A stretch of 55,228 bases of DNA, filler included, from Sluysia triapertura (Eukaryota): NCBI GenBank assembly GCA_046118255.1. It is 3 parts of 3 records of this genome, joined end to end, with 100 filler letters (N's around TTAATTAATTAA, not from the genome) between each part and the next. Parts side by side here need not be neighbours in the genome. Positions count along the whole stretch, not along the records: positions 19,360 to 43,552 come from JBJNIA010195155.1; 2 more parts are not named here. The stretch is one strand, 5' to 3'. Every line of letters starts with the position of its first letter. The first letter of the stretch is position 1. This document shows, piece after piece, positions 19,260 through 43,267 of this stretch. Under the pieces are notes generated by a model. That model saw only the letters and a program-made list of their open reading frames with translations, ran no database searches and was not told the DNA's origin. The position numbers and the translations under genes are program-made.

Positions 19260-19360
19260 NNNNNNNNNNNNNNNNNNNNNNNNNNNNNNNNNNNNNNNNN
19301 NNNTTAATTAATTAANNNNNNNNNNNNNNNNNNNNNNNNNNNNNNNNNNNNNNNNNNNNT
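19260..19360. other. Artificial join: N44-TTAATTAATTAA-N45
   Basis: Six-frame-stop linker centred in Ns. Confidence 0.95.
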
Positions 19361-21846
19361 CAACTTTTATAATTAAATTCAAATTGTTTTTAATCTCCAC
19401 TGTCTCAAGCGCTACATTCTGCGGTATAGCATTAGGTCCAACTCTGCAATCACATCCTAAAAAATTTATAAGATAATAATAACACTTAGAGTAAGTAAAA
19501 AAATTTTACAGTATGTTTATTCTGGAAAAATTTCATCCTTGTAAAGTCGTGCACCATTTTGATGATTTGAAACTCGAAACTACATGAAACGGATCTCATT
19601 TTTGCGTACACTTTCTATAATTACAATCTAAATCAGGATCTTGATTGATAAATTTTGGACTTGTGATGATATTGACGACATAAGTGCATAAGCTCGAGTT
19701 GTATTTTGTGATCTGATTAAGCTCTTGATTCGTTCCTGTTTCAAACGAAGCTCGTAATATATGTTGATGACCACTTTTGTTACAATAATAACGAATCATA
19801 CACATATGAATCATTGCTACAAAATTGTTGAAATTATTAATGTCTGCAAATGCAAACATGACATTGGCCAAAGGAGTCGCAATTTTACTCATGATAAATA
19901 AACCATAGATAAAATTACTAAATGTTATGAAGTACTTCATACTATTTTCCAGAGAATTAAGCTTATCAAAATTAGCCGCGATTGATTTTATTCTTAAAGC
20001 ATATGATTAGTTTTAATGTCCACATTTTTAATTACACATAATGTAGGGTTCTAAAAATTTCCTCGTGCGTCTTTCAATAACGTAGCGTTCGGGTCTACAT
20101 TTTCACCTTTGTGGCTTATGACTTTGATATATTCAATAAATTGTTTAATTTGAACAAACGTTTTGTTAACTTGTATTATACGCATCTTAATAACTTGTGT
20201 TGGACTACGCAATCTATCTAGACATAGTACAGGAACATTTGTATCTCCTCGTTTTTATTCATTTGATATACGTTTTCTCAAATTAATATTTTGATTATTT
20301 GAAGGTTCCTTTTGAAGAATAAGATCCACATAATATAAAGCATTTTTGTAATCCTTTAACTTGAGTAAAACTTATAATCCCTGATTTCAATTTTATCCGA
20401 AGCTTTATTCGTTAAATCATCAAACAATTTTATAGCCAAATTTAAGCATTATTTATTTTTCGATCGACAGAGTATGAACACATAAAAATTACGTATCTTT
20501 ATCCACACAACCTGACTGTTTTTCTTTAGCATATTTATTTCTAACACTCATAATTTCTTGATTTTTTAAAATTTTGTTTTTTGTTGGTCATCCAATCAGG
20601 GCTTTAAAAAGAGACTAATGAGTAAAATCTGTCCTGATTGGATGATGGCCAGAAAATTATAACTGACATACAACGTGTGATTGCTAATGATTAACCATCA
20701 TCAATATTGAAGATTTTGACGAGCAGTGTCAATACTAATGATGGCAGCAACTCATTCAACTATTTTGGATTATAAAAATTTTATAATAATTAATTTAATA
20801 ATTGGTAATAATAACGATAATATTATTATTATTAACAAACATAAATAAAGAACTTTTACACGATCTTGTCTTCTTTATATCTTTATTTCTTCTGACATAT
20901 AAATTGAACGGAATAAGGACGATAACGGAGTACACTATGCTCGAATTATCGTCGTTATTTCGTTGTGTGACATTGAATTCTCTAAAACTGTAGTAATTTT
21001 CTTAAACTTCTTGAAGGATTTAAACATGTTGGAATGAATTTAAAATGTATTTTGGAATAAACTTCTGAGTAGTAATTGTTTCGAAAGAATTGATAGGCAT
21101 AATTCACCTGTGAAGATATAATAAATTATATGAGTCAAAAATGAAATAGAGAATGATAGAATAAGTTCTTAAATATTGATTGAAGTTTAAGATTGAAAAT
21201 AAGGTTTAAGTATTGAAATATCGTGGATAAAAAGGTTTATTGAAAAGATTGTAATTTAATGAATCTAAAAATGATTGCAATACAACTCATTGTATATTTA
21301 AGGTGTTATTATACTATGTTTTGCGTAATTAATTTGATGTTTTGGTGTTGTAGTTTTATGTTAATGAAGATTATGCATAGATGAATAGTGCGTTTGAAAC
21401 GTTGTAATTGATTCGAAGGTGTGAAATGGGTATTTTATGTGTTTCAAGTAGATTTATTGGTGTTGCGGAATGGTGTTAACTGTAATTGTGGTTTATATGT
21501 TGTAAGTTTAAACAAATGAACTATTGAATAAATATTATTAAATATTAAGTATTAATTGTTATAGTGTACTGTAAAATAAAGGGTTCGAAAGAATTGAATA
21601 GATTATTTCGAATTTGTTTGTTATTGGGTAACCGTGAAAGTCGCGTACATGTTTTTGGTGGGTTGGTTAATGTAAATTGGTAATGTTGGGTGTAACTGTG
21701 ATTTAGATGTTGTGGATTTGTGAATATAAATTGATTTTAAAGAGCATGTAATAGATGGATGTATAACTGTTGAGATGTAATGAAAAGAGAAGGAAAAGAT
21801 GCTGGTTTTTAATAAATTTTAGTGGTTGTCAAGGTTGGCCACTACA
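19361..21846 (-). mobile_element. Family A element with Fis1-derived cargo, cut off by an assembly gap
   Basis: Terminus TGTAGTGGCCAACC at 21846; same base skew, AAGATCGTGT motif and hairpin module as 23032-25804. Confidence 0.75.
20291..20551 (-). pseudogene. FIS1: Captured, decayed Fis1 (mitochondrial fission 1) TPR domain
   Basis: Over two frameshifts and two stops: RNKYAKEKQSGCVDKDT*FLCVHTL / RSKNK*CLNLAIKLFDDLTNKASDKIEIRDYKFY / KLKDYKNALYYVDLILQKEPSNNQ, colinear with Fis1 EKAAGSVSKSTQF...RSK...QRDYVFY...RLKEYEKALKYVRGLLQTEPQNNQ. Confidence 0.85.
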
Positions 21847-23031
21847 TAAGAACGTGTAAAATAAAATAAGATTAAAACAATAAAAAAGCGCTAATACGAG
21901 AAAATCATTTTTCACAAAACATCCTTTTTTAGTAATACCGAGCGAGCCTGTTTTTATCAATGCTGTCACTGCACAGAAATTCCAAATTACTCATATTATA
22001 ATAGTTATGTTAAACATCAAATATATTTTTGATTTATATACATTTATATTTTATTATTATTTAATAAAAGTTTCCTTTTCTTTTATATAAAACATTTCTT
22101 GTATCTGTATTGACTGATTACTTTGTATAAAAATTACAATTAACCAATCAAAACAATTTCAATTAATATTAAATGATATAATTTCATAATATCCTCTTTG
22201 GAAATAAGAGAAAGTTGAATTATAAAAATAATTATAAAAATGAATTTAAATAATTTTAAATCAAGATTTGGTTTAATCCAGAATTTGTATTTAAAGAAGC
22301 ACAAGTAAAATCATCAGTGAATCACTTAGTAAGACCAAATTTCTAATTAAGGAGTTTCTAATATTTTGGAGAAAATATTAGATTCTTCATAACAAATTTG
22401 ATTTTAATAAATTTGAAAGAATTAATACTAAAAATTATTAAATGTATAGATTTTATGTAAAATTTTATAAAATATTATATTATATAATATTATTATGTAA
22501 TATAACGATACCATCCAACTGAAACCATTAAACAAACAAATCAATAAAAGCGACTGAGAACAATTAGTAAACATAATCCACCAAATGAACGAAAATTTAC
22601 ACAAATACGTTCGGATTTCAAGCAACCTTCTCTGGAAAGTAATAAACTACCAGATAAAATCAACATTACACTAAAAACAAGTCAATCAACTCCCAACAAT
22701 ACAGGTACCGACCACAATAAATCAATTATAAACCCTGTAGTATCGATAGAAGGTACTTTATCGCATTTACAAGGTCATAAAGCAAGACCCTTAAGAACAC
22801 CGCATACTACTCTCCAAACAACCACCACGTCGAAACAACTCATCAGACATAATGAAACACACACACACCTCATTTAGACAAACCTTCACAAACGAAATGA
22901 AGACATCCAACTCAAATACATTCAACATATAACACTTTACCACCTATACCACCAATAAACTATCACACTCATATACAACTCGCAAATCCTTTTTAACAAA
23001 ATCAAACACATACAATAAAGTAGTAGGGTAC

Positions 23032-25804
23032 TGTGGTGGCCAACCCATTACTTTTAACAGATTTTATTACAAATTTTATTCTAAACATTTCAAGATCACA
23101 AACTTTCAAAATGTACAATATATATTTTAAAATTCATTAAGAAACATTTTTTACATAATCCCATGTCAACATAATCAAAACCATATGTTTCGATATCAAA
23201 CTCACTCTCAAAATCTACAGCTCACATTCCTAAATTCAAGCTTAATACTAACATAACTAAAGTCATATCCTTTTCAACATCACATAACCTTTTAGAAATC
23301 GTCAAAACCGTTTCTATATTTTATCTTTTTTCAGATCCATTAAAATCAATTTCCATTTATCAAAATAATTTAAATCCACTTTCTTATAAAATTCAAACCA
23401 CAATGATATTCAAAATCATTAATTTACATTAAAAAGTTCATCTTAAATATTTTATTAATCATTTCATAACAATCCAATTACAACCACATTCGAAATTAAC
23501 TACCAGACATCTTCAAATCAATTAAAACATTCTGACTTCATGATCTGTTATCATTTAATCCCTAACATTACAGAAAGACAATATTACTTAAAATTATCAA
23601 ATTATCAATAAGTCAAATTTTCAACATTATACAAGCATCTTTTCAACTTACCAAAACATAACCTACGATCTATCTTATTCACATCCACTAAACTATTCTT
23701 TTTCAACATATGCATAATTCACAGTCGTTTAATATCCAAACATTACCTTCGTTCAAAACACCAATGGACATTTATCATCCATTTTTAACATTTATATTAT
23801 TTCAAAATACTTAAGTGTAGACCCAAATACATCTTCAGTAAGAAATATTAAGTAGCATTTAAAAATTCACTTAAAATTAGTAAACAGCATTTAAAATTAT
23901 ATTAAAACGTTTTACGCTTTGTCTTATTAGAATCACACTACACAATAAAATTTCATTGTAAACACGTAACAATAGTTTGTAACACCATATGTTCATGAAA
24001 TCTTAACATTCAACCTCAGACAATTAACTTCTGTAAACTAAGAAATTGATTTTTAAATATGTTAAGAAATACTATCAAATTAAGAAAAGAAAGATCATGT
24101 TCTTTAAGTTTAAAAGATGTATGTAATTTATATTAAGATAATAATAACATTAAAATTATTATTATTATTTTTATAAAAATTATTTGGTAGCTGTCATCAT
24201 CAATAGTGATACTTTTAGTTCACATGTTTGGTTTAATGTCACTATTGATGATGGTTGTGACGACAGTTAATTATATTTAAATTCTGTCGAATAACAATTG
24301 ATTGGATACCCAATCACCTCGAGTGGCTAATCAAAAAATGCAATTTAAAAATGATTTTATGGATTTTATAAGATGTGTTAAATACGACAAAATGAGATTA
24401 TAAATGAATAACAAATATAAACATAATATTCATTCGCTTTTAGAAGCTAATATGGCGTTATGAACAAATGAGTTTAATATATTGTCTTTAGAAAGTAAAA
24501 AAATTGATCGAAGATATTGCAATAATCAAATATATTTTGGATGATTTACTTAATTCATTTAATTGTATCCGAGAAGATTTTCAATTCAAATGGCTAAAAT
24601 CAATAAAACTAGTAATGATAGTAGTCGTAAACGATGTAAATGCTTACGTATTAATATTTTGGAACAAAACCATCAAATTGTCATTTATAATGTTTGTTTG
24701 CAGTTTCTTTATCTTAGGCTCGATATTATTCACCAAAATTTAGAAGTGATTACTCGGCTGGACAGCAATGAATATATACTCATTATAAATAGACGTCAAG
24801 TTCGTGATTTCAAAACTATCATTACAAGTGTTAGTGACAAAACTAGACTATGCATTAACAACCATATAGAAATATTATCTCAATGTCATTTGATTTCAGA
24901 AATAAAAAGATCAAAAGAAAATACCTTTTACGAATTTATTATCCGAATTTCTACTGAATTAATCAAAATTAGTAAAGATAAATTTCCAATGAAAAAAGAT
25001 ATGACGATTTGTACTAACGAGAATGATCTAAATCAGAATTTTAAGCTCACGCCAATAGTTGTTAATATAATCTGATTAGTTAGAACCATATAAAAGAAAG
25101 TTAATGGTCATTGTGCAAGTTGAAGGAAATCATATATTACATATAAAATTAACTAGATGTTGGAATCACAACGTTAGAAATGACGAAAAATCTCAAGTCA
25201 TATGTTCCTTAATAAAAAAATTAACAAGTTCAAAACATTAATTCGAACGCAGCGACCATTCAATACAGAATCGCCAATGTCAATTGAAGAATATTCGATC
25301 AAATGTCATCTGCTGATCCATTCTATATTTCGATGACACTAGACAACAACTACTTATGAGTACAGACTCTGGCTTGATCAACTCTTGTTCAATCGAAATG
25401 ATTTATCTAATGTTGTTCTCTTTGGTGGTTCGAGACAGAATGGTTTTCAAGAACTTCTTTAAAGTAATTTTTAATTGTAATAACACTTATAACATATCTT
25501 TAACATTTACTTCTTTTTTTAGAGTGTTACAAAAACGAAATTCGAAACGTTTGGCGAAATCATTATTAAAAAAGAATTTTCAAAAATAAACATTAAATGT
25601 CTTGTTATTAGTAATAAAATGGTTGTTAATTTGGTCGTTTGCTTTGTTAATAATTATTTAAAGTTAAAGAATTTTCGATTTTCCAACAAACAGGTTGTAA
25701 TGAAGTAAATAAAAATGAAAGTTGTATAAGTTCTGATAGTGATAACTTAAAAATAAATCCTTTTTAATATTAATAAAACCTGTTAATATCCGATTACCAC
25801 AACA
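23032..25804 (+). mobile_element. Complete 2773-bp solo-LTR-like element (family A) with an internal decayed cargo gene
   Basis: Termini TGTGGTGG...CCACAACA (7/8 inverted match); GGTAC duplicated at 23027-23031 and 25805-25809. Confidence 0.8.
24470..25708 (+). pseudogene. Decayed cargo gene of the complete family A element, with a 59-nt intron at 25464-25522
   Basis: Same-strand ORF pieces at 24504, 24563 and 25356; a phase-0 splice joins ORF 25356 to a 61-codon frame ending TAA at 25708, followed by AATAAA. Confidence 0.55.
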
Positions 25805-26479
25805 GGTACGGTTTCGCCACCAGATCGACCCATTCTTTTAATCCGGAACGTCCAAGATTTTAAAATCGCAGGATACGCCCAGCTAGGAGCGTCGTCTCAG
25901 AATGGGTAACCACCGCAGTATAAATGGAAGCCCATGAAATATTAGTCCACCCCTAATAAAACTTATGCTCAAGTATGCAAAACGAGCATACTGAGTAGAT
26001 CTTTAAGTATCCTTGAATCGTAAGGTATCACTATACGACCCGAAAACGAAGAGGCAACAAAGTCAAATTAAAAAGCCAAGCATCCAAACCGACAGAAGGC
26101 AGCACCACAAGGTTGTACAGTATCAGCTCAGAAATAACCTAGTCGGTCAAAACAAATCAATATCTCGTAATAATGACGGATGCTTTAAGACTCTAATATG
26201 CCAGCTGATCATAGTCTAACAGGCCATCAGAAAGTTATTACTCGAACAAATCAGTACAAGTTCAATAAAAGCAAGAACGACCGAAAACCACGAAAAGAAA
26301 ATACAAGTCAGTAAATATCTCAACCTATAGATATGGCCAACAGCATCACTGTACCATAAATACCGGAACAGACAAATTTCAATCAACAAAACGGAACTAT
26401 AAATTACGCGGTTGACAAGTGTAATGATAGAATTACAGTACAAATCAAATGCACTACGAAGCAACGTTACCATTTGCCA

Positions 26480-27245
26480 ACGTTCCCCATAAAAATATTA
26501 GGCAATATCATAAAGCATGAACACGTATGGCTTTCCCATCAATCTAAAGCCCTGTGCGAACAACTCACAGCATATTCGACGGGGCTGTAATCCGACGTCG
26601 ACGGCGAGATCCCCATAACCCAACAGAAATCTCAGAAGGCAATTATCTTCGACATGCCCTTCTTCACAGATGAATCCGGACATGGTTCCTTGTCGTTGAA
26701 TCCCATTTTAAAATGACAAAGCACCATGTTTATCCAACTACTTCCTCTCCTACCGCAACTTCTCCTAAGTAAGCAATGTAGCCTGATACAAACTTGCCTA
26801 CAGTCGGAAAATGATTACGATGACCTGAAACAAACAATCTTGGCACATTACCGTCCCAAAACAGAAAAGGTATTCCAATATTATTTCAAAGCGCAATCTA
26901 TAGGGACTTTATCCCCTTCTGAATTCTTAGCCAAGATCAGGAACGATCTTGAGCCATTCGGTTGAGAAAAGGATGAGAACCATGGACGCCATGCCCACAG
27001 AAGTCCAGGCTGCCTTCACCGGGAGCTAAATAGATAATATCAAAGAACTGGCCAATGGCGTACAAGGCGTTCAGACACTATAAACGCTATTCAAGACACG
27101 TCACATTCAAAGTCAGGCATCACCTTGGAATCAGTATCAATGCGGATTTATGCCCTGACTGTACAAGTGGCAGAAATTACCAAATTGGTAGCCGCCGGTC
27201 TTACACAATATCCGAATAAACCCCCTGCAATACGCCAATCCTCAT
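26480..27245 (+). mobile_element. Decayed Ty3/Gypsy gag
   Basis: PFF..WFLVVESHF...LLP...YDDLKQTIL...IGTLSPSEFLAKIR follows the Gypsy gag pattern PFW..WF..VE..F...Y..LK..L...LG..PS..L; higher GC than flanks. Confidence 0.7.
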
Positions 27246-27433
27246 TGTGGTGACCAACCTTATAGCTTTAATAAAACATACCAAAATCTCACAAATGTAC
27301 AAAAATAAAATTTTACTTCTAAAAACACCTTAAGTCTATAAATTCATGACAAAGAATATTACCAACTCATAGCAAGAACTCCATCAATAATACTTACCCA
27401 AAACCTCACAACATCCAAATCACAATAATGCTG
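27246..27433 (+). mobile_element. Family A terminus fragment that truncates the Gypsy gag
   Basis: TGTGGTGACCAACC followed by C/A-rich sequence. Confidence 0.6.
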
Positions 27434-27660: not shown

Positions 27661-28309
27661 TTATCGTCGCGGTGCTGCAATTGACATTCCCCCTTTTATT
27701 TTTATACGAACAATTTTCTTAATAAGTTTTTCTGATAAAATGTCCTTATCTACGAAATTATTCATATAAACTAGTTTTGTACATTTTATCAAATATCCTC
27801 TTATTACACATTCGTATCGGTGAATAAAAGATTGAAAAAATATTAAATCCCCTTCCCTTACTGCTTGAAAAATATCGAAAGGGTTATCAACAATTAATTT
27901 TTCAACAAATACTAAAGGCATATTTAATTTTTTCGTAATATCGTCTATATTTACACACCACTTTTCTTTAAGCACATAGGTTATTTGTAATGATATCAAT
28001 CTGAGATAAGAGTCAATTAAAATATTATTTATTAATCGTAAATTATTGTCATGAAATAACATATTACTAACACATGATTCAATAGTCTTTAAATCAACTT
28101 CTACATTATTATATAACGCGATTAATGAAACTTTATGGTTTTGGAGTTCTAATTCTTCATAAATTTCTTCATAACTTTAACTTGTTACTAGATATCAAAA
28201 AACTCATTATATCAATGCAATTCCTTTCGCTTTATTTATCAATTGATGAAACTTCATGTGTTCTCTTAAAATCAGAGGCTAATACCTTAATTTCATTCCA
28301 AGTTGTCAT
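27661..28309 (-). pseudogene. UFL1: Captured, intronless, decayed N-terminal domain of E3 UFM1 ligase 1
   Basis: MTTWNEIKVLASDFKR...K*SERNCIDIMSFLI matches WEEIRRLAADFQR...RLSERNCIEIVNKLI; after a frameshifting deletion EEIYEEL...VDLKTIE...LIDSYL...IFFQSFIHRYECVIRG stays colinear with UFL1. Confidence 0.85.
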
Positions 28310-29400: not shown

Positions 29401-30769
29401 ATTGAAGGAAACAGAAAAAAATAGAAAGGCAGATTGTTAATAAAAGAAATAATAATAATGATAACAATAACGTGATTATTATGTTTATTAATACTAAAAT
29501 GTTGATGTTGAAATTATAAAATTTATTATGAAAATTATTGTAAAAGTTATTATAAAAGTTATTACTTGATAATCATACTATATAACAATAATGACTATAA
29601 TTATTATATATATTTTAATACGATCTGAATTTTAATAATAATAGTGGTAGTTCATGATAATTAGGTACGATGATCATGTTTGTTTTTTGAATGAGTTTAT
29701 TAGTTTGTTTAATAGTCTGTGTATATGTGAAGTGTTTTATGTGATGAAATGTGATGAATTTTGTGTGATTTCCCTACACAAGTAAAGAACAAATAAGCTT
29801 AAAGAAAATTTGATAACCGTTAAACAGTTAACCGTTATAATTGTAAAGTAAAAATACTGACCCTAGTTAATTACATTGCTGAAAGATTTAGGATATACTT
29901 TCGTAGCATTTTATTTTCTTGTGAGTACGTCTTTCTCGTAATATAAATCGTATTGCACAGGCGGACCCGTGTAATTTAATAGTTTTATAATTGTTTCAGA
30001 CTTAGAAAAAGTTGAACATTAATAATTCAATTAACAATAATTAATAGTTGGATATAACTACATACGTATAGACATTCAAATTAAATAATAAGTAGTAATA
30101 TTAATTTTTTGTGAAGTATTCAAATATTAACATTACAAATATATAGAAGTTTTTCTGTTGGACTTGGTGAATATATAAGATGTAAATTAAACCATAAATA
30201 ATAAGAAAATAAAAAATGACTAATGATTATTTTGTATATATTGAATAATCTTTCCAATTTTCTTAAAAATTATATTCTCTCATTCAGATTACAAGATGCA
30301 ACTTCCAAGCGCAAAGATAATAAATTACATAAATCCTTCTTACAATGGCATTGACCGTTCCTGTGGTAATAATGCCACTCCCCTTGCACTTCTTAATTCA
30401 AAATCCATTCCAAATTACCTTAAATGCGAAATAAATAATCATTTCATCTCGCATTTATTTGACATAAATCAACTGCAACCGCCATTAGTATTCAACGTTT
30501 TAAAGGGTTATCTATTAGACAAAGGCGTTGTAGTAATAGCTGCTGCAAGAGGAACAGTTGCATACTAGATTGCAAGGATTCACATCACTATACATTAAGA
30601 ATCTAACCAGCAATTGCAAAATTCAAATAGTAGTGGAGAAATTATCCATTATATGTGCCATTGTTTTAGAAAAACACGACAAGTCACTCAATTTAGCTCT
30701 ATTTCCTTTATTATATGAGAATGACATGGGTAATATCTATAAGTGGCTAAAACCAAGCATTGCCTAACA

Positions 30770-31260: not shown

Positions 31261-32444
31261 TTACAAATGTAAGCATAAATGTGTGGATGTCCAATAAAAA
31301 GTCAAGAAAAGAGATTCATTTATATATGCATGTGGTGTGCAAATAATCTCTATACTTAATAATAGTTTTATTATTGTCACACAATTTGGTCTGTCTAAAA
31401 TATATAGCGCCCTTTCACTCCAGTTTAAAAAAGAATTAAATGTTAGGGTTATTTCAACTAGTTCAACCATTTTCACCTCATGTTTAAGGAAGAAATAAAA
31501 TCATTTTATTTCATTCATTTTAAAAAACATTAATAAATTAATTATGCTTATCAGTGATTGAGCGTATAGTCAACTGTTCAAATTTTTGATCGTTATAAAT
31601 ATATTGCTAATAAGGTATAATAGTGACTTCCACATTCTTTAGCAAACTTAACATCATTCTTAAATCCTGTAAATAAAACATAAATCACAGGCGAACTCAC
31701 TTATTTTCTGATTTAATGGAAAATAATCCTATAGAATAACCGAATTTTAAATCGCAAAGCTCTATCTACAGCTGAACCAAAATCTGACAACTCTTTACAG
31801 TTAGATAGCCAATAATCTGTGGAAAAATGTTGAACTGTTTTGAATTTCTTTGCTAAGGCAAATTTACATAAATATAGGAAAGAAGCAACTATTATTAATA
31901 TGTAAGAGCATATGTAAATTTAATAGACAATCAAACTTTCATGGATACTGCTAAGAGGTATCCCCAAATGTGGAGCCGAAGAAATTAATTGTATGATGAT
32001 TAAGGTAATTTTAAAAATCGCAATTCCTATAAGAAAAATGACTCGTCGAGATTTGAAAAGAAAAAAATTCTGATTTTAAATATAGAAAATATTCTAATTA
32101 TAGAGGAAATAAATCAGCAAACTATATTAACCTTAGAGGATTCGGAAATAATTTTAGATAGGTAATATTTAAGCCCTTAAAGAAGGAATAATAATCATTT
32201 TCGAGATACTAATAATTTTGGTTACTGTTGAATTAGTTTAGTATGAATTACCTTTTCATGTTAGGAATTTCTTATCTCATTAACATTGAAAAATCTTTTT
32301 CAAATTTTGGTACAATTTTTAGAAAGTGAACAAAAAATTAACCTTACTCTTAAATTTCTTTAAAAATTAATTAATCGGAATTTGTGCTTTTAGAATTTAA
32401 AAACGAAAAATAATCGAAATATAAATTAACTCCTGATTTCTTAC

Positions 32445-32667
32445 CTGAAACACATTCATTAAAGCCAGTAGCACCAAACCTAATGCAATAGACAACATCT
32501 GAGTACCAGTACCAATAATTGCACAAAATAACAAACGACATTTAATTGGTGGCCGAAATACGTCATTGTGGACACTTTTCCAACCTTTTTCTTCTTGTTC
32601 TTCTTCTTCAGTCATTTCGGTAGAATTTGGCATTTGATTATAATGTGCAAAATCTCTCCGAAGAATT
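32445..32667 (-). CDS. TM9SF1: TM9SF1 coding exon 2; later exons not found in the window
   Basis: RILRRDFAHYN...GWKSVHNDVFRPP...LFCAIIGTGTQML; ends CAG|gtaag. Confidence 0.92.
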
Positions 32668-32706
32668 CTAATATTAACAATGTCAATAATTTATTAAAAA
32701 CCAAAC

Positions 32707-33446
32707 CTTCCCATTATAAACATTATAAATGTCAATAATATAAATACTAAAACTAAAGAATTTGTAATTGAAATCCAATGAATTTCCAAAATCCTGGGAA
32801 AGAAATTATTATTTAAAATCAATACATTTCGATGAGAAGCTTCTATATTAGTTGGAACCCAACTAATAGAATAAGTAAACGTAAAATTTAGAAAATTTTT
32901 ATTTCTTAATGGTATCAAATCAATCGGATTAGTTTGTGTTGTAAAAACACTTCCATATATGATATTATTATTATTATATTGAATCTGAATATTATGATGC
33001 GTGTAAAACAATGCTTTGTGAGAATGTGGCAATATCTTACTTTCCTCCAAATTTCCAATAAATCCACGAAGCGGTATATTTTCATCTAGAACAAACTCAA
33101 AATAATATAATTCTTCAATAGCATCAATTAATTTTTGAATGTCTTTTTCTTGCAAAACTAAATTACAAAGTAATTTGCGATTCACATTTTCTCGAAAACG
33201 TAATTCGTACAATGATTCTGCCAAACGATCACCATCAAGCACTTCACCAAGACTTAGTTGTTTAAATGCCACTTTTTCTGGTCGACAAACAGGCAGCGTG
33301 TAATAAAGATAAGTTTCATGCGGATTGTAATATGGGCCAACTTTATTTACATATAAAATAACTTTTTCATTTAGTTCATATTTTTTAGGATTAAATCTTT
33401 GACATGAATAGATTTGAAAGAAGATAATTAAAAAATAAAGATTCAT
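32707..33446 (-). CDS. TM9SF1: Transmembrane 9 superfamily member 1 (EMP70 family), coding exon 1
   Basis: Signal-peptide-like start, VILYVNKVGPYYNPHETY.YY.LPVC, SLGEVLDGDR, LEIHW.SI.NS; 39-nt GT-AG intron at 32668-32706. Confidence 0.93.
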
Positions 33447-34187
33447 AAATAAAATTCTATATATATTTTCAAAAATCACATTGATCCGTATATTTCAATA
33501 AATCTAAAAATGTAATCAGATTAATTTTAAAAAACTTCAAGTTTGTCAAATGAATTTTAATGAATTTTAAAATTCGCTTTAATAATTTAATTTAATAATT
33601 CTACAAAAATAATCTATCTCAATTATTTAACATTGAAATCTAAAATTTTGAAAAATATTACTGAAACAAAATAAATACAAGATTTAAACAAATTTAAATC
33701 AAAATTTTTAATTTGAGATGGACACTTTTTGAAGATGATACAAAAATAAAGTACAATTTTGAATCCATAATTAGTTACTACTTATTTATTTATAAAAATT
33801 TGGTAACTTGGTTGTGTTTGAATATCAACTTTATTTGTAGTTAACAGAAACTTATTCCAATTACGATAAAAATTAACATTAACTCATTTTACATCAAAAC
33901 CTATTTTACTTATTGTACAAGTTCAGCAAAATCAAGGTAATTATATCTTAAATAACCTTATTTAAAATTACTTTAATTAAAAGTAACCAATTAAAATGTA
34001 TTCAAACTTAAAGTTCTCTTATTTATAATGAACCTGTAACTTTCAATTTACTTTAATGAAGAGCATAATCAAGCATATTTATCGATTATTTAACAATTTC
34101 ATTCTTTTATTTCCTTATTTTATATTTCTTATTAAAAATAACAATAAAATTTTAATAAATATATTAATTTGTAAAACGCAAAGGGTA

Positions 34188-34490
34188 TTAGGCTCGTAAA
34201 TTTGCTACAGGATGCATGAGAATAGAAACTGGTTTAATAATAGGTAAGGGATGATCAGCAGATGCACATTCATCGGGTAGCGAAATACCAACAGAAATAT
34301 TAACTTTGGATGCATCAAACCATTCTCGACTACTGAAGCAGATTGTTGTATCCAGATAAGTTATGGATTTATCACGTTGATTTTGTGATTGTTGAAAATT
34401 ATCTTCACTTATACACGGTTTTGATCGACTCCAATGTGAAATAGGTGGATGCCATAAAATCACGCGGCCGTCTAAACACTTAGCTTTTAT
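34188..34490 (-). CDS. INTS4: INTS4-like terminal exon
   Basis: IKAKCLDGRVILWHP...LDTTICFSSREWFDASKVNI...LPIIKPVSILMHP resembles VQVLYPDGQAQMIHP...LITQVYLSHTAWTEACQVEV...IPFSKPVKVYIMP; 303 nt to TAA. Confidence 0.8.
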   Translation of the reverse strand: MKAKCLDGRVILWHPPISHWSRSKPCISEDNFQQSQNQRDKSITYLDTTICFSSREWFDASKVNISVGISLPDECASADHPLPIIKPVSILMHPVANLRA

Positions 34491-37550: not shown

Positions 37551-39148
37551 TTTGCATTTTTTAAGAAAAAATTAATAAAACAACAAAAATTAAGAACAAT
37601 GGTTGCTAACTTGATTTATAAAGACAATAAGTCAAATTTAATCCATGTAATTTTTAATAAAATAAACCACGTTATAAAGATAATGAAAATCACTTTAAAC
37701 CATAAACTCCTAAAGTAACTATAATAATAATAATAACTAGTATAAATTATAATTTCAGATTGAGTTGGTGTTTTTTGAGATGATAGAAGATCACATAAGT
37801 GAGATTATTGAAATGTGATATTGAAATTACATGATATAATATAAAAATTTTGTTAAAAATCTTTATGAAGGAAATATCACTGTCGGTTTTATTAAACTTT
37901 ATAAAGAAAACGATTAACCGGATCTAAATTGAACAATTTGAAAAATCAATCAATTCTCTTTTGAACGTCAATTCTTCAAATTCGCTCTTTTCTTATTAGG
38001 AATTAATGACACATGAATAAATAAGCTCATTTCTATTAAGATAAGCATTGATAATTTTGCTTCAAAATCCAGGTAAAATCATCGTTATTTAAAAAATCCA
38101 AGCATTGTATACAATTTATATTTATATATTGTAAACAATTAATAGTTTTTATCAAACATTTGTGTATAAAGAATATATCACTTTGATTTTTAATCTTCTT
38201 TTGTTAACAGAATAAAAGCTAAAGGTCAAAGAACGACGAGATAAGTTCAAGTTAAATTATAAAGAGGTAAACACAAACTATCATTAAAGTAATTTTAAAT
38301 TTAATTTTATTAAGTGTTTTTTGAGTTTTTTAATTTAACGTGCAAGTTAAACTCGTTAATTGCAGCAAGAAGTTAAGGACACTTTACTTAGTTTTTGACA
38401 ATTGACATCTTGTGAGTACGTTTTCCTTGAGATATAAAACGTGCATCACAAGCGAGCCCGAATAAGTTTTATAATTGTTCCAGTAATAGGATAAAATCTG
38501 AACATCTCGATTTACAAGTTAACAAGTCAGTATTGATTGAACATTTATGTGTTTTAAGTTTAAATTTTAAAATTTAATAAAATTAAAATAAAATATCTTA
38601 CTAAAAGTTTTGTAAAAGAATTTATTTGCAATTGCATACTAATAACATAGTTCTTGTGTGTTATAAATAAAGTGTCCTTGGATTTTTCAAGTTATTAACG
38701 TGCGGATAAAGAGGCGAGTACTGAATTAAGCCTCTATAATATATCACCTTTAAGTACTAAAGAGTAACAAAGAAAAATTTAGTTTTAAGTTAATAAAAGT
38801 TTAAGGTTTTAACTAATTTAAGTTAAAAAGGAAAAGAAGCACAACACAAACCAAAATAAAATAAAGATTAAATTTATTATTTAATAATAAAACTTTAAAA
38901 TATTTATTTATAATACCAATGATTCAATATCAGCATAAAAGTAAGTCTCTCTATATATAATTCCAAAAAAGAAAAGACTTGGTGTGAAATATGATTTAAT
39001 AATTACTTTAACATTATTGTTCTCGTTAACTATAGAAAAGGACAAAGAAATCATTACTAATTATTTTTAAACTTGCAGGAAATGCATTTGACTTTCAAGA
39101 TTTTATGAAAGGCTAAATGGCCGAAAAATGTTACGAAACGGTTAAATA

Positions 39149-39650
39149 TAATGGGTTTGGTGCATAAATTGGTGCGGTTTTTACAATTATGAAAAATGCA
39201 AACTGATCAAGAATAAAAACCATGCAAAAAATTCCAAATAACAAAATGAATTTATTAAATCATTAGAAAAAACAAATATCTGTCTATATCGGTGAGATAT
39301 TCTCCGTCACAATCGATCACTTCCTTCTGGCAGATTGTCAATCCCACGTTTGAAGAAACTTGGTGATTTTTGGTGGAAAAATTTTTCAATCCACGTTGTT
39401 ATTGCTTCTTCGTTTTCAAACGCAGCGTTTAAATGTTGATTAAAATAGAAAAGGAGCAGATCCCTTAAATGTTCATTTTTATCTACCTGACAATCCATTT
39501 TAATGATGGTAATTAAAGTGAAAGTTAGTCTAAAATGATTTAAATAGATAATTCAGCTGAATAAATATAACTCAAATCACGTAAAACAAGAAGTTGGTGT
39601 GTTTTCTTTGCAACAAATAAAACCGCACGAATTTATGCACCAACCTAATA
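39149..39650 (-). mobile_element. Non-autonomous mariner (about 500 bp) with both TIRs and flanking TA
   Basis: TIRs near 39151-39182 and 39619-39648; ORF 39307-39498 fuses the transposase N- and C-termini. Confidence 0.9.
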
Positions 39651-39733
39651 TCATTTCAAACGATTAAAAACGTCTTCAATAATGCATGTGAATTAGCACA
39701 TTTAAGAACTCATTATTAAGTAAAATCACTAAC

Positions 39734-40011
39734 CACAATAGGTGTATTAACACTAATCACTTCATTTGATTTGTTCTCATTAACATCCAATCCCGTAAAT
39801 TCAGCCTTAATTGGTAGATCAACTGCCAATCCAGAGGAAAATTTAAATATTTCTTTACCGTAATCATCATTAGTGGGGAAAAGAAATTTTCCAAAAATTT
39901 TCTGTGGATTAAATTCGTGGGTATCTTTGTCAATTTCGTTACTGTAATAAGTAGCATTGTCGTGGAAACAGGATAAATTACCCAATATACGAGTACAAAT
40001 ATTTAATTCAA
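39734..40011 (-). CDS. INTS4: INTS4-like exon
   Basis: EIFKFSSGLAVDLPIKAEFTGL resembles NPLRFTSGLVVALDVDATLEHV; GTG|gttagt donor. Confidence 0.8.
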
Positions 40012-40284
40012 CTAAAAGTGTAAAATTAATTGTAAAGTAAATTAATAAAATTAAATAAAAGTACTAAAAATAAAATACTTTAGAATACAAAAAAAATTGA
40101 ACAAATTTTATAATGTACTATTAAAATATCTTTAAAAACAATATTGAAAAAGAATCTAAACTAAGTCATGTAAAAGAAATTAACTGAAATTATTGAAAAT
40201 CTAAAACATTCATTTCCCATAATAACATTTTGTGTTAAAAACTAATTTTTATTTATTAAATTTATTGCTCTTGTTAAAATTCAT

Positions 40285-42130: not shown

Positions 42131-42853
42131 TTTTTAAATACAGGAATCAATTGTTTATTATCACGGATGTTAACAATAACTTATTGTTAAAATAAATTAA
42201 GTTGTCGCTTACAAATAAATTGTCAGATACTGTTCTTATGGAATGGCAATATTGTCAAAAAGGTTTTACAAGGATTAACAGAAATCTTCATCTAACAGAA
42301 TCTACAGAACTTCTAAAGACATGAGAATGAATACTTCATTTAAATTAAACATTTGACAGATGTAGTTGTACTGATTTCTGATGAAGATAGTGATGCAATA
42401 TCTGAATTATTTGTTTTGAAGAAAAAATATGGAAAAATCGGATAAAACTGAATCAAATTTTGTTGAGAACAATGATGACAATACAATTATAAACGAATGC
42501 CAAGTTTGATATGTTCTCTATAATTATTTAATACAGTGATTTCAACTTTTTGTCAAGTCAATCTTATGAGACAATTTCAAGACCCACCAATTTGTGAAAC
42601 TATTGTAGTTAATGAAATTCTTAAAATTGCTTTGATTTTAGAGTCTGATAAATATGGTTTTGTTATTGACCACACATTTAAAATTGTCTTGTTTAGAAAG
42701 GCATTATTTTTGAAATTATTTTTGACACATGAAGATTCTAGAAAATATTTCAATTTGATCTTGCAATTTGATCTGTCAATAATGTATCATGATTTTGTAT
42801 TATTTAATCAAAAATTCAAGTTTTTTATTTTAATATATTAAAACTTGACTAAC

Positions 42854-43267
42854 CTTGTAAACAAGCCTTTGTGCTAATGCTAAATCCCTTAAATGCAATT
42901 TTGGTTGTACACAATATGCCAACAATCCAATGAGATCCTTCATCCAATAAGATCTGCCGACTTTCTCACTCCACAGTCGACACATTTGATCAAATTCAAC
43001 ACTGATTTGTTTTTGATATTTCAAACTTGCGCATTTCATTAAATCCATGAAATCATTACGAATATCAGGCGATAAAGGTACTTTACATGAATCACACAAT
43101 GACACAAATGACGACGAATCAAGTTTTTCGGATAAATGTTGTTGTTGCTGGATATTATAGCCATGACAATTGTAAACTTGAATAATATGATATACTTTTA
43201 GACAATTTGATTCAAAATTTTGTCTCATTGCAACTCGATTATCATCTATTTTATCAATCCGAGCTAC
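42854..43267 (-). CDS. INTS4: Integrator complex subunit 4-like exon (most 5' exon found)
   Basis: 414 nt, tttag/gttag bounded; ends LALAQRLVYK, splicing to MIYAYS (compare INTS4 ETYKMEFMYSGV). Confidence 0.75.

What the first reader, a model, noticed from the sequence alone, without database searches (positions are those of the whole stretch)
19361..20551. Mitochondrial fission protein Fis1 captured by a mobile element and fused to an unknown domain
Seen: about 35 nt after the hairpin module an ATG (20551) starts an intronless, broken frame matching the Fis1 TPR domain. Where the Fis1 membrane anchor should be, coding-like sequence continues for about 900 nt (including ORF 19596-19940). Known: Fis1 is tail-anchored and acts in mitochondrial/peroxisomal fission and apoptosis signalling. 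Inference: intact relatives could encode a soluble Fis1 decoy that alters host organelle or cell-death pathways.
Basis: partly seen in the sequence, partly recalled or inferred. Interest (0 to 1): 0.85.

Follow-up and report, generated by a model that had tools for sequence, protein, structure and literature searches.

The report
Dead Fis1 gene remnant, no transposon
This is a real but broken leftover of the mitochondrial fission gene Fis1 in ordinary DNA of an AT-rich invertebrate animal; nothing shows that a mobile element captured it or that it is fused to a new domain, so it is most likely an ordinary pseudogene.

Summary
The Fis1 likeness is real. One stop-free 38-residue piece on the minus strand inside 20258-20551 hits Pfam Fis1_TPR_C (39.6 bits, E 6e-10; cut-off 25.3). 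Its best matches among solved structures are Fis1 chains. The upstream half of the claimed match is not significant on its own. The span is broken: two frame changes and one internal stop by direct reading, plus a stop just past the match. It also lacks the tail anchor: no hydrophobic 18-residue window occurs in any frame of the 900 nt downstream.

The 'unknown domain' ORF (19599-20006) has no relative among 1.84 billion representative proteins and no Pfam family. It gives no confident fold (pLDDT 43), and its codon-position composition matches chance open frames. Only a 67-codon stretch (20054-20254), in the frame of the Fis1 piece, looks coding-like, and it has no relatives.

Nothing indicates a mobile element. 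None of 141 open stretches carries a transposon protein domain, no repeat touches the region, and there is no poly(A) tract or Helitron-type end. The 'hairpin' is a 13-nt palindrome carrying two opposed CCAAT boxes, so it looks like a promoter. The neighbours are host genes (UFL1, TM9SF1, INTS4). Genomic copies could not be counted. Verdict: ordinary decayed gene copy, low interest.

The parts
20258..20551 (-). Fis1-like gene remnant, broken. By direct reading it has two frame changes and one internal stop, and a stop closes the frame just past the TPR_C match. It lacks about 18 N-terminal residues and the whole tail anchor.
   Evidence: Pfam Fis1_TPR_C 39.6 bits, E 5.9e-10 on one stop-free piece; Fis1 chains lead the solved-structure search; translations; other pieces not significant alone.
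20054..20254 (-). 67-codon open stretch directly downstream, in the same frame as the supported Fis1 piece. Its composition is coding-like; its identity is unknown.
   Evidence: GC1-GC3 0.254, reached by 0.3% of null stretches; no Pfam family; no homologue; modelled as one long helix, mean pLDDT 69.
19599..20006 (-). Not supported as coding.
   Evidence: 0 hits in 1.84 billion representatives; none in the word-indexed search; no Pfam family; pLDDT 43, pTM 0.28; GC1-GC3 0.000, like the null; frames this long arise in 9% of simulations.
19362..19505 (-). 48-codon open frame that runs off the edge of the piece; unidentified.
   Evidence: Translation; no Pfam family; GC1-GC3 0.104, not distinct from null.
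20588..20645 (.). Each arm carries a CCAAT box with NF-Y-type flanks, so the two boxes face opposite ways, 45 bp apart.
   Evidence: z = -3.35 for the 186-nt stretch; two exact copies; 0.33 matches with up to 2 mismatches expected by chance; paired CCAAT boxes are common in promoters (PMC4889920).
20694..20745 (.). Second imperfect inverted repeat, with arms of about 17 nt and an 18-nt spacer, just upstream of the first.
   Evidence: DNA fold.
27664..28176 (-). Neighbour: UFL1 (E3 UFM1 ligase) exon, profile positions 58-213 of 272.
   Evidence: Pfam E 5.6e-20.
32400..33494 (-). Neighbour: TM9SF1 (EMP70), two exons split by a 39-nt intron (32668-32706), profile positions 1-302 of 517.
   Evidence: Pfam; 52-54% identity to animal TM9SF1; tblastn; sequence.
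34191..34490 (-). Neighbour: last exon of INTS4 (C-terminal Ig-like domain).
   Evidence: Pfam INTS4_C, E 1.9e-6.

Best explanation
The span 20258-20551 (minus strand) is a dead, non-functional remnant of a Fis1 gene lying in ordinary host DNA of an AT-rich, non-vertebrate animal, downstream of UFL1, TM9SF1 and INTS4 on the same strand. It keeps a recognisable second TPR (Fis1_TPR_C) but has lost its reading frame, its first 18 or so residues and its membrane anchor. It makes no Fis1 protein and does nothing that can be read from the sequence. I favour an origin at the DNA level, either a duplicated copy or the gene decaying in place, over a retro-copy. The reasons are that a promoter-like pair of CCAAT boxes sits 36-95 nt upstream of its ATG, coding-like sequence continues in frame for 67 codons, and no poly(A) tract follows. 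Shown: the Fis1 homology, the breaks, the missing anchor, and the absence of transposon hallmarks in the piece. Inferred: the mode of origin and the promoter reading of the palindrome.
For: Fis1_TPR_C hit above the curated cut-off and Fis1 chains heading the PDB search. Stops and frame changes read directly. The breaks are unlikely to come from general assembly error, because nearby exons of 266 and 171 codons are intact. No hydrophobic anchor candidate. No transposon protein domain in 141 open stretches. No repeat touches the region. No poly(A) tract and no Helitron-type terminus. Host genes flank it. Twin CCAAT palindrome just upstream (PMC4889920). The 67-codon in-frame stretch has a coding-like GC gradient.
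Against: The piece ends at 19360, about 900 nt downstream, so an element boundary, a distant anchor exon or a poly(A) tail beyond the edge cannot be excluded. No full-length Fis1 could be fetched, so there is no frameshift-aware alignment, no parent gene, no intron comparison and no dN/dS. Copies in the host genome could not be counted: the metagenome scans found nothing, but an animal genome is unlikely to be held there. The 45-bp spacing of the CCAAT boxes is not one of the preferred spacings reported for human promoters (24-28 and 35-37 bp). TM9SF1 and UFL1 also appear only in part, which could mean that the whole block consists of gene fragments.
Confidence: 0.6

Rival explanations
1. Processed (retro-copied) pseudogene of Fis1: an mRNA copy, truncated at its 5' end, that was inserted and then decayed.
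For: The Fis1-like span has no room for introns. It is short at the N-terminal end by about 18 residues, as 5'-truncated retro-copies are. It is broken.
Against: A retro-copy should keep the 3' end of the message, yet the anchor is absent and the 900 nt downstream hold no A-run of 6 or more. No flanking direct repeats were found. Lack of introns means little in a host with 266-codon exons. A promoter-like element sits directly upstream.
Confidence: 0.15
2. One reading: a gene fragment captured by a mobile element (Helitron-like or other) and carried with a hairpin module, with intact relatives elsewhere encoding an anchor-less Fis1.
For: A significant palindrome lies 36 nt from the ATG. The anchor is missing and 67 in-frame codons of unknown identity follow. 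Several neighbouring genes also appear as partial matches on the same strand. A MITE-like element elsewhere in the piece shows that the genome holds transposons.
Against: The piece holds no transposon protein. The palindrome has a 32-nt loop, is AT-rich, occurs once, and no canonical Helitron end follows it: the only CTRR lies 17 nt past the arm and is followed by C, not T. No repeat covers the region. Neither downstream stretch has a relative among 1.84 to 5.8 billion proteins. Neither the module nor the Fis1 piece has a further copy in the metagenome set.
Confidence: 0.1
3. A working Fis1-like gene whose apparent frame changes are assembly or consensus errors in A/T runs.
For: The supported piece is well conserved, about 50% identical to human Fis1 over 32 residues. 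That is similar to TM9SF1's 52-54% identity to its relatives. Both frame changes lie next to short T runs. A promoter-like element and an ATG are in place.
Against: There are also in-frame stops, which indel errors do not make. No anchor is present. Neighbouring long exons are intact, so the assembly is not generally error-prone.
Confidence: 0.07
4. A chance TPR-like match in AT-rich sequence.
For: Only 34 residues are significantly matched, and the upstream pieces fail on their own.
Against: E is 5.9e-10 against Fis1_TPR_C and no other family matched, generic TPR families included, even at E up to 10. Fis1 chains take the top ranks in the PDB search. The match would still be significant after correcting for a few hundred open stretches in the piece (141 of 45 codons or more).
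Confidence: 0.01

Closest known systems
Fis1 (mitochondrial fission 1 protein; Pfam Fis1_TPR_N PF14852 and Fis1_TPR_C PF14853; solved chains such as 1NZN, 1PC2, 7YKA)
   Same: The second TPR is recognisably Fis1, including the conserved stretch aligned to human residues 82-113.
   Different: The reading frame is broken, the TPR_N half is not detectable on its own, the span is about 18 residues short at the N-terminus, and there is no C-terminal tail anchor.
Ordinary pseudogenes (duplicated, unitary or processed)
   Same: Recognisable homology to a housekeeping gene, with stops, frame changes and missing ends, in otherwise ordinary host DNA.
   Different: The type cannot be settled. There is no poly(A) tract or target-site duplication, the parent gene is not available, and a promoter-like element is retained.
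Gene-fragment capture by Helitrons and similar elements
   Same: A host gene fragment lies next to a palindrome, and other partial gene matches lie on the same strand.
   Different: No Rep/helicase or any other transposon protein, no canonical 3' end, a 32-nt loop rather than a tight GC-rich hairpin (the Helitron features are from general knowledge), and a single copy in the piece.
Promoter modules with two CCAAT boxes bound by NF-Y
   Same: Two CCAAT boxes with NF-Y-type flanks lie within 100 nt upstream of an ATG. Nearly half of NF-Y-bound regions in one human cell line (K562) hold two boxes (PMC4889920).
   Different: The boxes face opposite ways as a perfect 13-nt palindrome, 45 bp apart, outside the spacings preferred in human promoters (24-28 and 35-37 bp). 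Binding was not tested, and the consensus flanks are from memory.

Membership tests
Fis1 | Fis1_TPR_C domain | tested here: met
   39.6 bits against a cut-off of 25.3, E 5.9e-10, profile positions 13-46 of 53; Fis1 chains lead the PDB search.
Fis1 | Fis1_TPR_N domain | tested here: inconclusive
   No hit for any upstream piece in Pfam or PDB. The pieces are only 20-32 residues long, so the test has little power. The read-through test was left out.
Fis1 | C-terminal transmembrane tail anchor | tested here: not met
   No 18-residue hydrophobic window in any frame of 19361-20257 on the minus strand. An anchor exon beyond the edge of the piece cannot be excluded.
Fis1 | Uninterrupted reading frame | tested here: not met
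   Two frame changes and one internal stop by direct reading, plus a stop just past the TPR_C match.
Processed pseudogene | Poly(A) tract at the 3' end | tested here: not met
   No A-run of 6 or more, and no 25-nt window above 56% A, in the 900 nt downstream. The piece ends at 19360.
Processed pseudogene | Flanking target-site duplication | tested here: inconclusive
   No flanking direct repeat found, but the 3' boundary is unknown.
Processed pseudogene | Lacks the introns of the parent gene | not testable with these tools
Helitron or other gene-capturing transposon | Element-encoded protein (Rep/helicase, transposase, reverse transcriptase) | tested here: not met
   Pfam found only EMP70, E3_UFM1_ligase and INTS4_C among 141 open stretches of 45 codons or more.
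Helitron or other gene-capturing transposon | Tight terminal hairpin followed closely by a CTRR end, or terminal inverted repeats around the cargo | tested here: not met
   13-bp stem with a 32-nt loop. The only CTRR lies 17 nt past the arm and is followed by C. No inverted repeats bracket the region. The left end is cut by the edge of the piece.
Helitron or other gene-capturing transposon | Several copies in the genome | not testable with these tools
   One copy in the 24-kb piece and none in metagenome contigs. The host genome was not searchable.

The most novel reading that the evidence does not exclude
This copy is a decayed member of a lineage-specific family of anchor-less Fis1-TPR proteins that carry a helical C-terminal extension (the 67-codon in-frame stretch) in place of the membrane anchor. 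Intact, soluble Fis1 paralogues would then exist in this animal or its relatives, whether or not a mobile element carries them.
Probability: 0.06. Interest if true: 0.5.

Novelty: new member of a known kind. Interest (0 to 1): 0.12.

Why it matters
As it stands it matters little: one more decayed copy of a housekeeping gene. It would matter more in two cases. If the complete genome held no intact Fis1, this would be loss of a conserved fission adaptor in an animal. If intact anchor-less relatives existed, they would be a soluble Fis1 paralogue. Both questions can be settled by purely descriptive work on the source genome and its transcriptome.

Tried and rejected
- Ciliate-type genetic code: rejected, because the stops include TGA and the frame also shifts.
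- Short introns as the cause of the frame changes: rejected. The Fis1-like pieces abut with no spare bases, and the host's shortest intron seen is 39 nt.
- Codon-usage log-odds as a coding test: withdrawn. With leave-one-out, a confirmed exon scored below the null mean, so the test has no power. I kept only the calibrated GC1-GC3 gradient, and that test also misses one of four known exons.
- Rfam and tRNA scans of the piece: nothing found.
- Tandem repeats: only short AT-rich arrays, none in the region.
- Metagenome scans for the palindrome and for a wobble pattern of the Fis1 piece: 0 hits, which says little for an animal genome.
- Fold search was not run: one model has pLDDT 43 and the other is a single helix, so matches would be meaningless.
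- No full-length Fis1 comparator. The length window of the search for homologous proteins excludes it for a 38-residue query, and I spent the one exhaustive job on the 136-codon ORF. So there is no frameshift-aware alignment and no dN/dS.
- Reading the span through with X at the stops to test TPR_N: left out.
- Literature: no paper links Fis1 with transposon capture or reports processed Fis1 pseudogenes of this kind.
- The contig is not human: 26% GC, a 39-nt intron, and TM9SF1 only about 52% identical to its best animal matches.

Slips to own up to:
- While eyeballing the translations I recalled stretches of human Fis1 from memory several times in my reasoning. None went to a tool and none is used as evidence.
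- This report gives only counts and outer bounds.

Full report
**What the piece is.**
- Positions 19360-43552 are 24,193 bases with no N and about 26% GC.
- Pfam scans of all 141 open stretches of 45 codons or more find only three families, all on the minus strand:
  - INTS4_C at 34191-34490.
  - EMP70/TM9SF at 32400-33494.
  - E3_UFM1_ligase (UFL1) at 27664-28176.
- The TM9SF exon is 52-54% identical to partial TM9SF1 proteins of an annelid, a brachiopod, bivalves, a shrimp and fishes. The host is therefore an animal. It is neither a vertebrate nor human.
- TM9SF1 has a 266-codon first exon and a 39-nt GT-AG intron at 32668-32706. The host thus has long exons and very short introns, and the assembly reads cleanly through real genes.

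**The observation.**
- An ATG at 20551 (minus strand) lies 36 nt from the palindrome.
- Translating 19361-20551 in three frames shows Fis1-like stretches spread over two frames and interrupted by stops.
- I searched the stop-free pieces separately. One 38-residue piece hits Pfam Fis1_TPR_C at 39.6 bits (cut-off 25.3), E 5.9e-10, and no other family matched. In the PDB search, ten of its 12 best matches are named Fis1, one is an unnamed mouse protein that aligns over the same stretch, and one is a designed TPR protein. It aligns to human residues 82-113 at about 50% identity. This match is real and specific.
- The three upstream pieces, and the stretch above the ATG, hit nothing related to Fis1. 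The TPR_N half rests on likeness by eye.
- A read-through or frameshift-aware test could not be run, because no tool returned a full-length Fis1 and read-through queries are not accepted.
- By direct reading, the span 20258-20551 carries two frame changes and one internal stop, and a stop closes the frame just past the TPR_C match.
- The frame changes are not introns, because the like pieces abut. The stops are not a variant code, because TGA is among them.
- By nucleotide distance the ATG sits about 18 residues later than the start of the human chain.

**The missing anchor and what follows.**
- No frame of the 900 nt downstream holds an 18-residue hydrophobic window. Such windows are common elsewhere in the piece.
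- The downstream sequence splits into two parts.
- The 67 codons at 20054-20254 lie in the same frame as the Fis1 piece.
  - Their GC1-GC3 gradient is 0.25, like three of the four confirmed exons (0.18-0.26). Only 0.3% of stop-free stretches from composition-matched simulations reach it.
  - The stretch has no Pfam family and no homologue.
  - It models as a single long helix.
  - It has no hit in the word-indexed search.
  - It has none among 1.84 billion representatives scanned exhaustively with HMMER, and no Pfam family.
  - Its fold has mean pLDDT 43.
  - Its gradient is 0.00, typical of chance frames.
  - A frame that long arises somewhere in 9% of simulated pieces.
- One caution applies: the databases seem to lack close kin of this animal, so a protein specific to its lineage would be invisible.
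- A codon-usage score that I first leaned on proved to have no power, and I withdraw it.

**Is there a mobile element?**
- I found no sign of one around the finding:
  - No transposon protein domain anywhere in the piece.
  - No direct or inverted repeat that flanks or touches 19361-20760, with either ungapped or gapped self-comparison.
  - No poly(A) tract.
  - No further copy of the palindrome in the piece.
- The 'hairpin module' is a perfect 13-nt inverted repeat (20588-20600 and 20633-20645) with a 32-nt spacer, and a second imperfect inverted repeat lies at 20694-20745. The 186-nt stretch folds better than all but 1 of 200 shuffles.
- The stem is not the tight GC-rich hairpin of Helitron ends (general knowledge), and no canonical CTRR end follows it.
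- Each arm carries a CCAAT box with NF-Y-like flanks. Paired CCAAT boxes are a common promoter layout (PMC4889920). The 45-bp spacing and opposed orientation differ from the spacings preferred in human promoters, so the promoter reading is a lead, not a result.
- The one clear transposon-like structure, a 513-bp element with 38-nt terminal inverted repeats at 39144-39656, lies 19 kb away.

**Best reading.**
- This is a dead Fis1-derived gene copy in host DNA.
- I favour a DNA-level origin (a duplicate, or decay in place) over a retro-copy. A retro-copy should keep the 3' end and a poly(A) tract, and both are absent. In addition, a promoter-like element and an ATG are retained, and coding-like sequence continues in frame.
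- Lack of introns says little in this host.
- I give this reading 0.6. The rivals are a processed pseudogene at 0.15, transposon capture at 0.1, a live gene with assembly errors at 0.07, and chance at 0.01. The small remainder is left for explanations I did not consider.

**An unexplained point that could change the picture.**
- TM9SF1 is seen only for EMP70 profile positions 1-302 of 517, and UFL1 only for positions 58-213 of 272.
- The C-terminal parts of the TM9SF1 relatives match nothing else in the piece.
- Together with the Fis1 remnant, this makes three partial gene matches on one strand.
- Possible causes are long introns, insertions, a decaying duplicated block, or captured fragments. 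The data here cannot tell them apart.

**Limits.**
- The piece ends 900 nt downstream of the match.
- Copy number, parent gene, synteny and dN/dS therefore remain open.
- I did not scan the viral contig collection (see referred steps).
- I made no joined, repaired or consensus sequence.

Noticed in passing
window 39144-39656: An element of about 513 bp bounded by 38-nt imperfect terminal inverted repeats (82% complementary), MITE-like. Its inner open stretch has no transposase Pfam hit. From memory the repeats recall mariner-type ends; I did not test that.
   Followed up: partly
window 25790-27420: A block of 34-41% GC in a piece that is 26% GC, lying between UFL1 and the Fis1 remnant. It holds several open stretches on both strands but has no Pfam or Rfam match. 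It may be a transposon relic or the diverged 3' part of UFL1.
   Followed up: partly
window 32400-33494 and 27664-28176: TM9SF1 (EMP70 profile 1-302 of 517) and UFL1 (profile 58-213 of 272) are seen only in part. The missing halves were not found anywhere in the piece. Both lie on the same strand as the Fis1 remnant.
   Followed up: partly
window 29917-30019 and 38408-38505: A dispersed repeat of about 100 nt, 71% identical, in direct orientation 8.5 kb apart. It is probably a short interspersed element.
   Followed up: no
window 22326-22410: An 85-nt self-complementary (palindromic) stretch at 73% identity, in a region of strong GC skew (+0.33 at 21360-22359, then -0.45 at 22360-23359).
   Followed up: no
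window 24563-25072 (+), 42833-43267 (-), 39719-40063 (-), 22548-22874 (+): Long open stretches of 109-170 codons with no significant Pfam family. Three of the four have a coding-like GC1-GC3 gradient. The piece holds 12 stretches of 100 codons or more against 1.4 expected, so unannotated or lineage-specific genes are likely.
   Followed up: partly
window 32668-32706: A 39-nt GT-AG intron in TM9SF1, an unusually short intron for an animal and a clue to the host lineage.
   Followed up: partly
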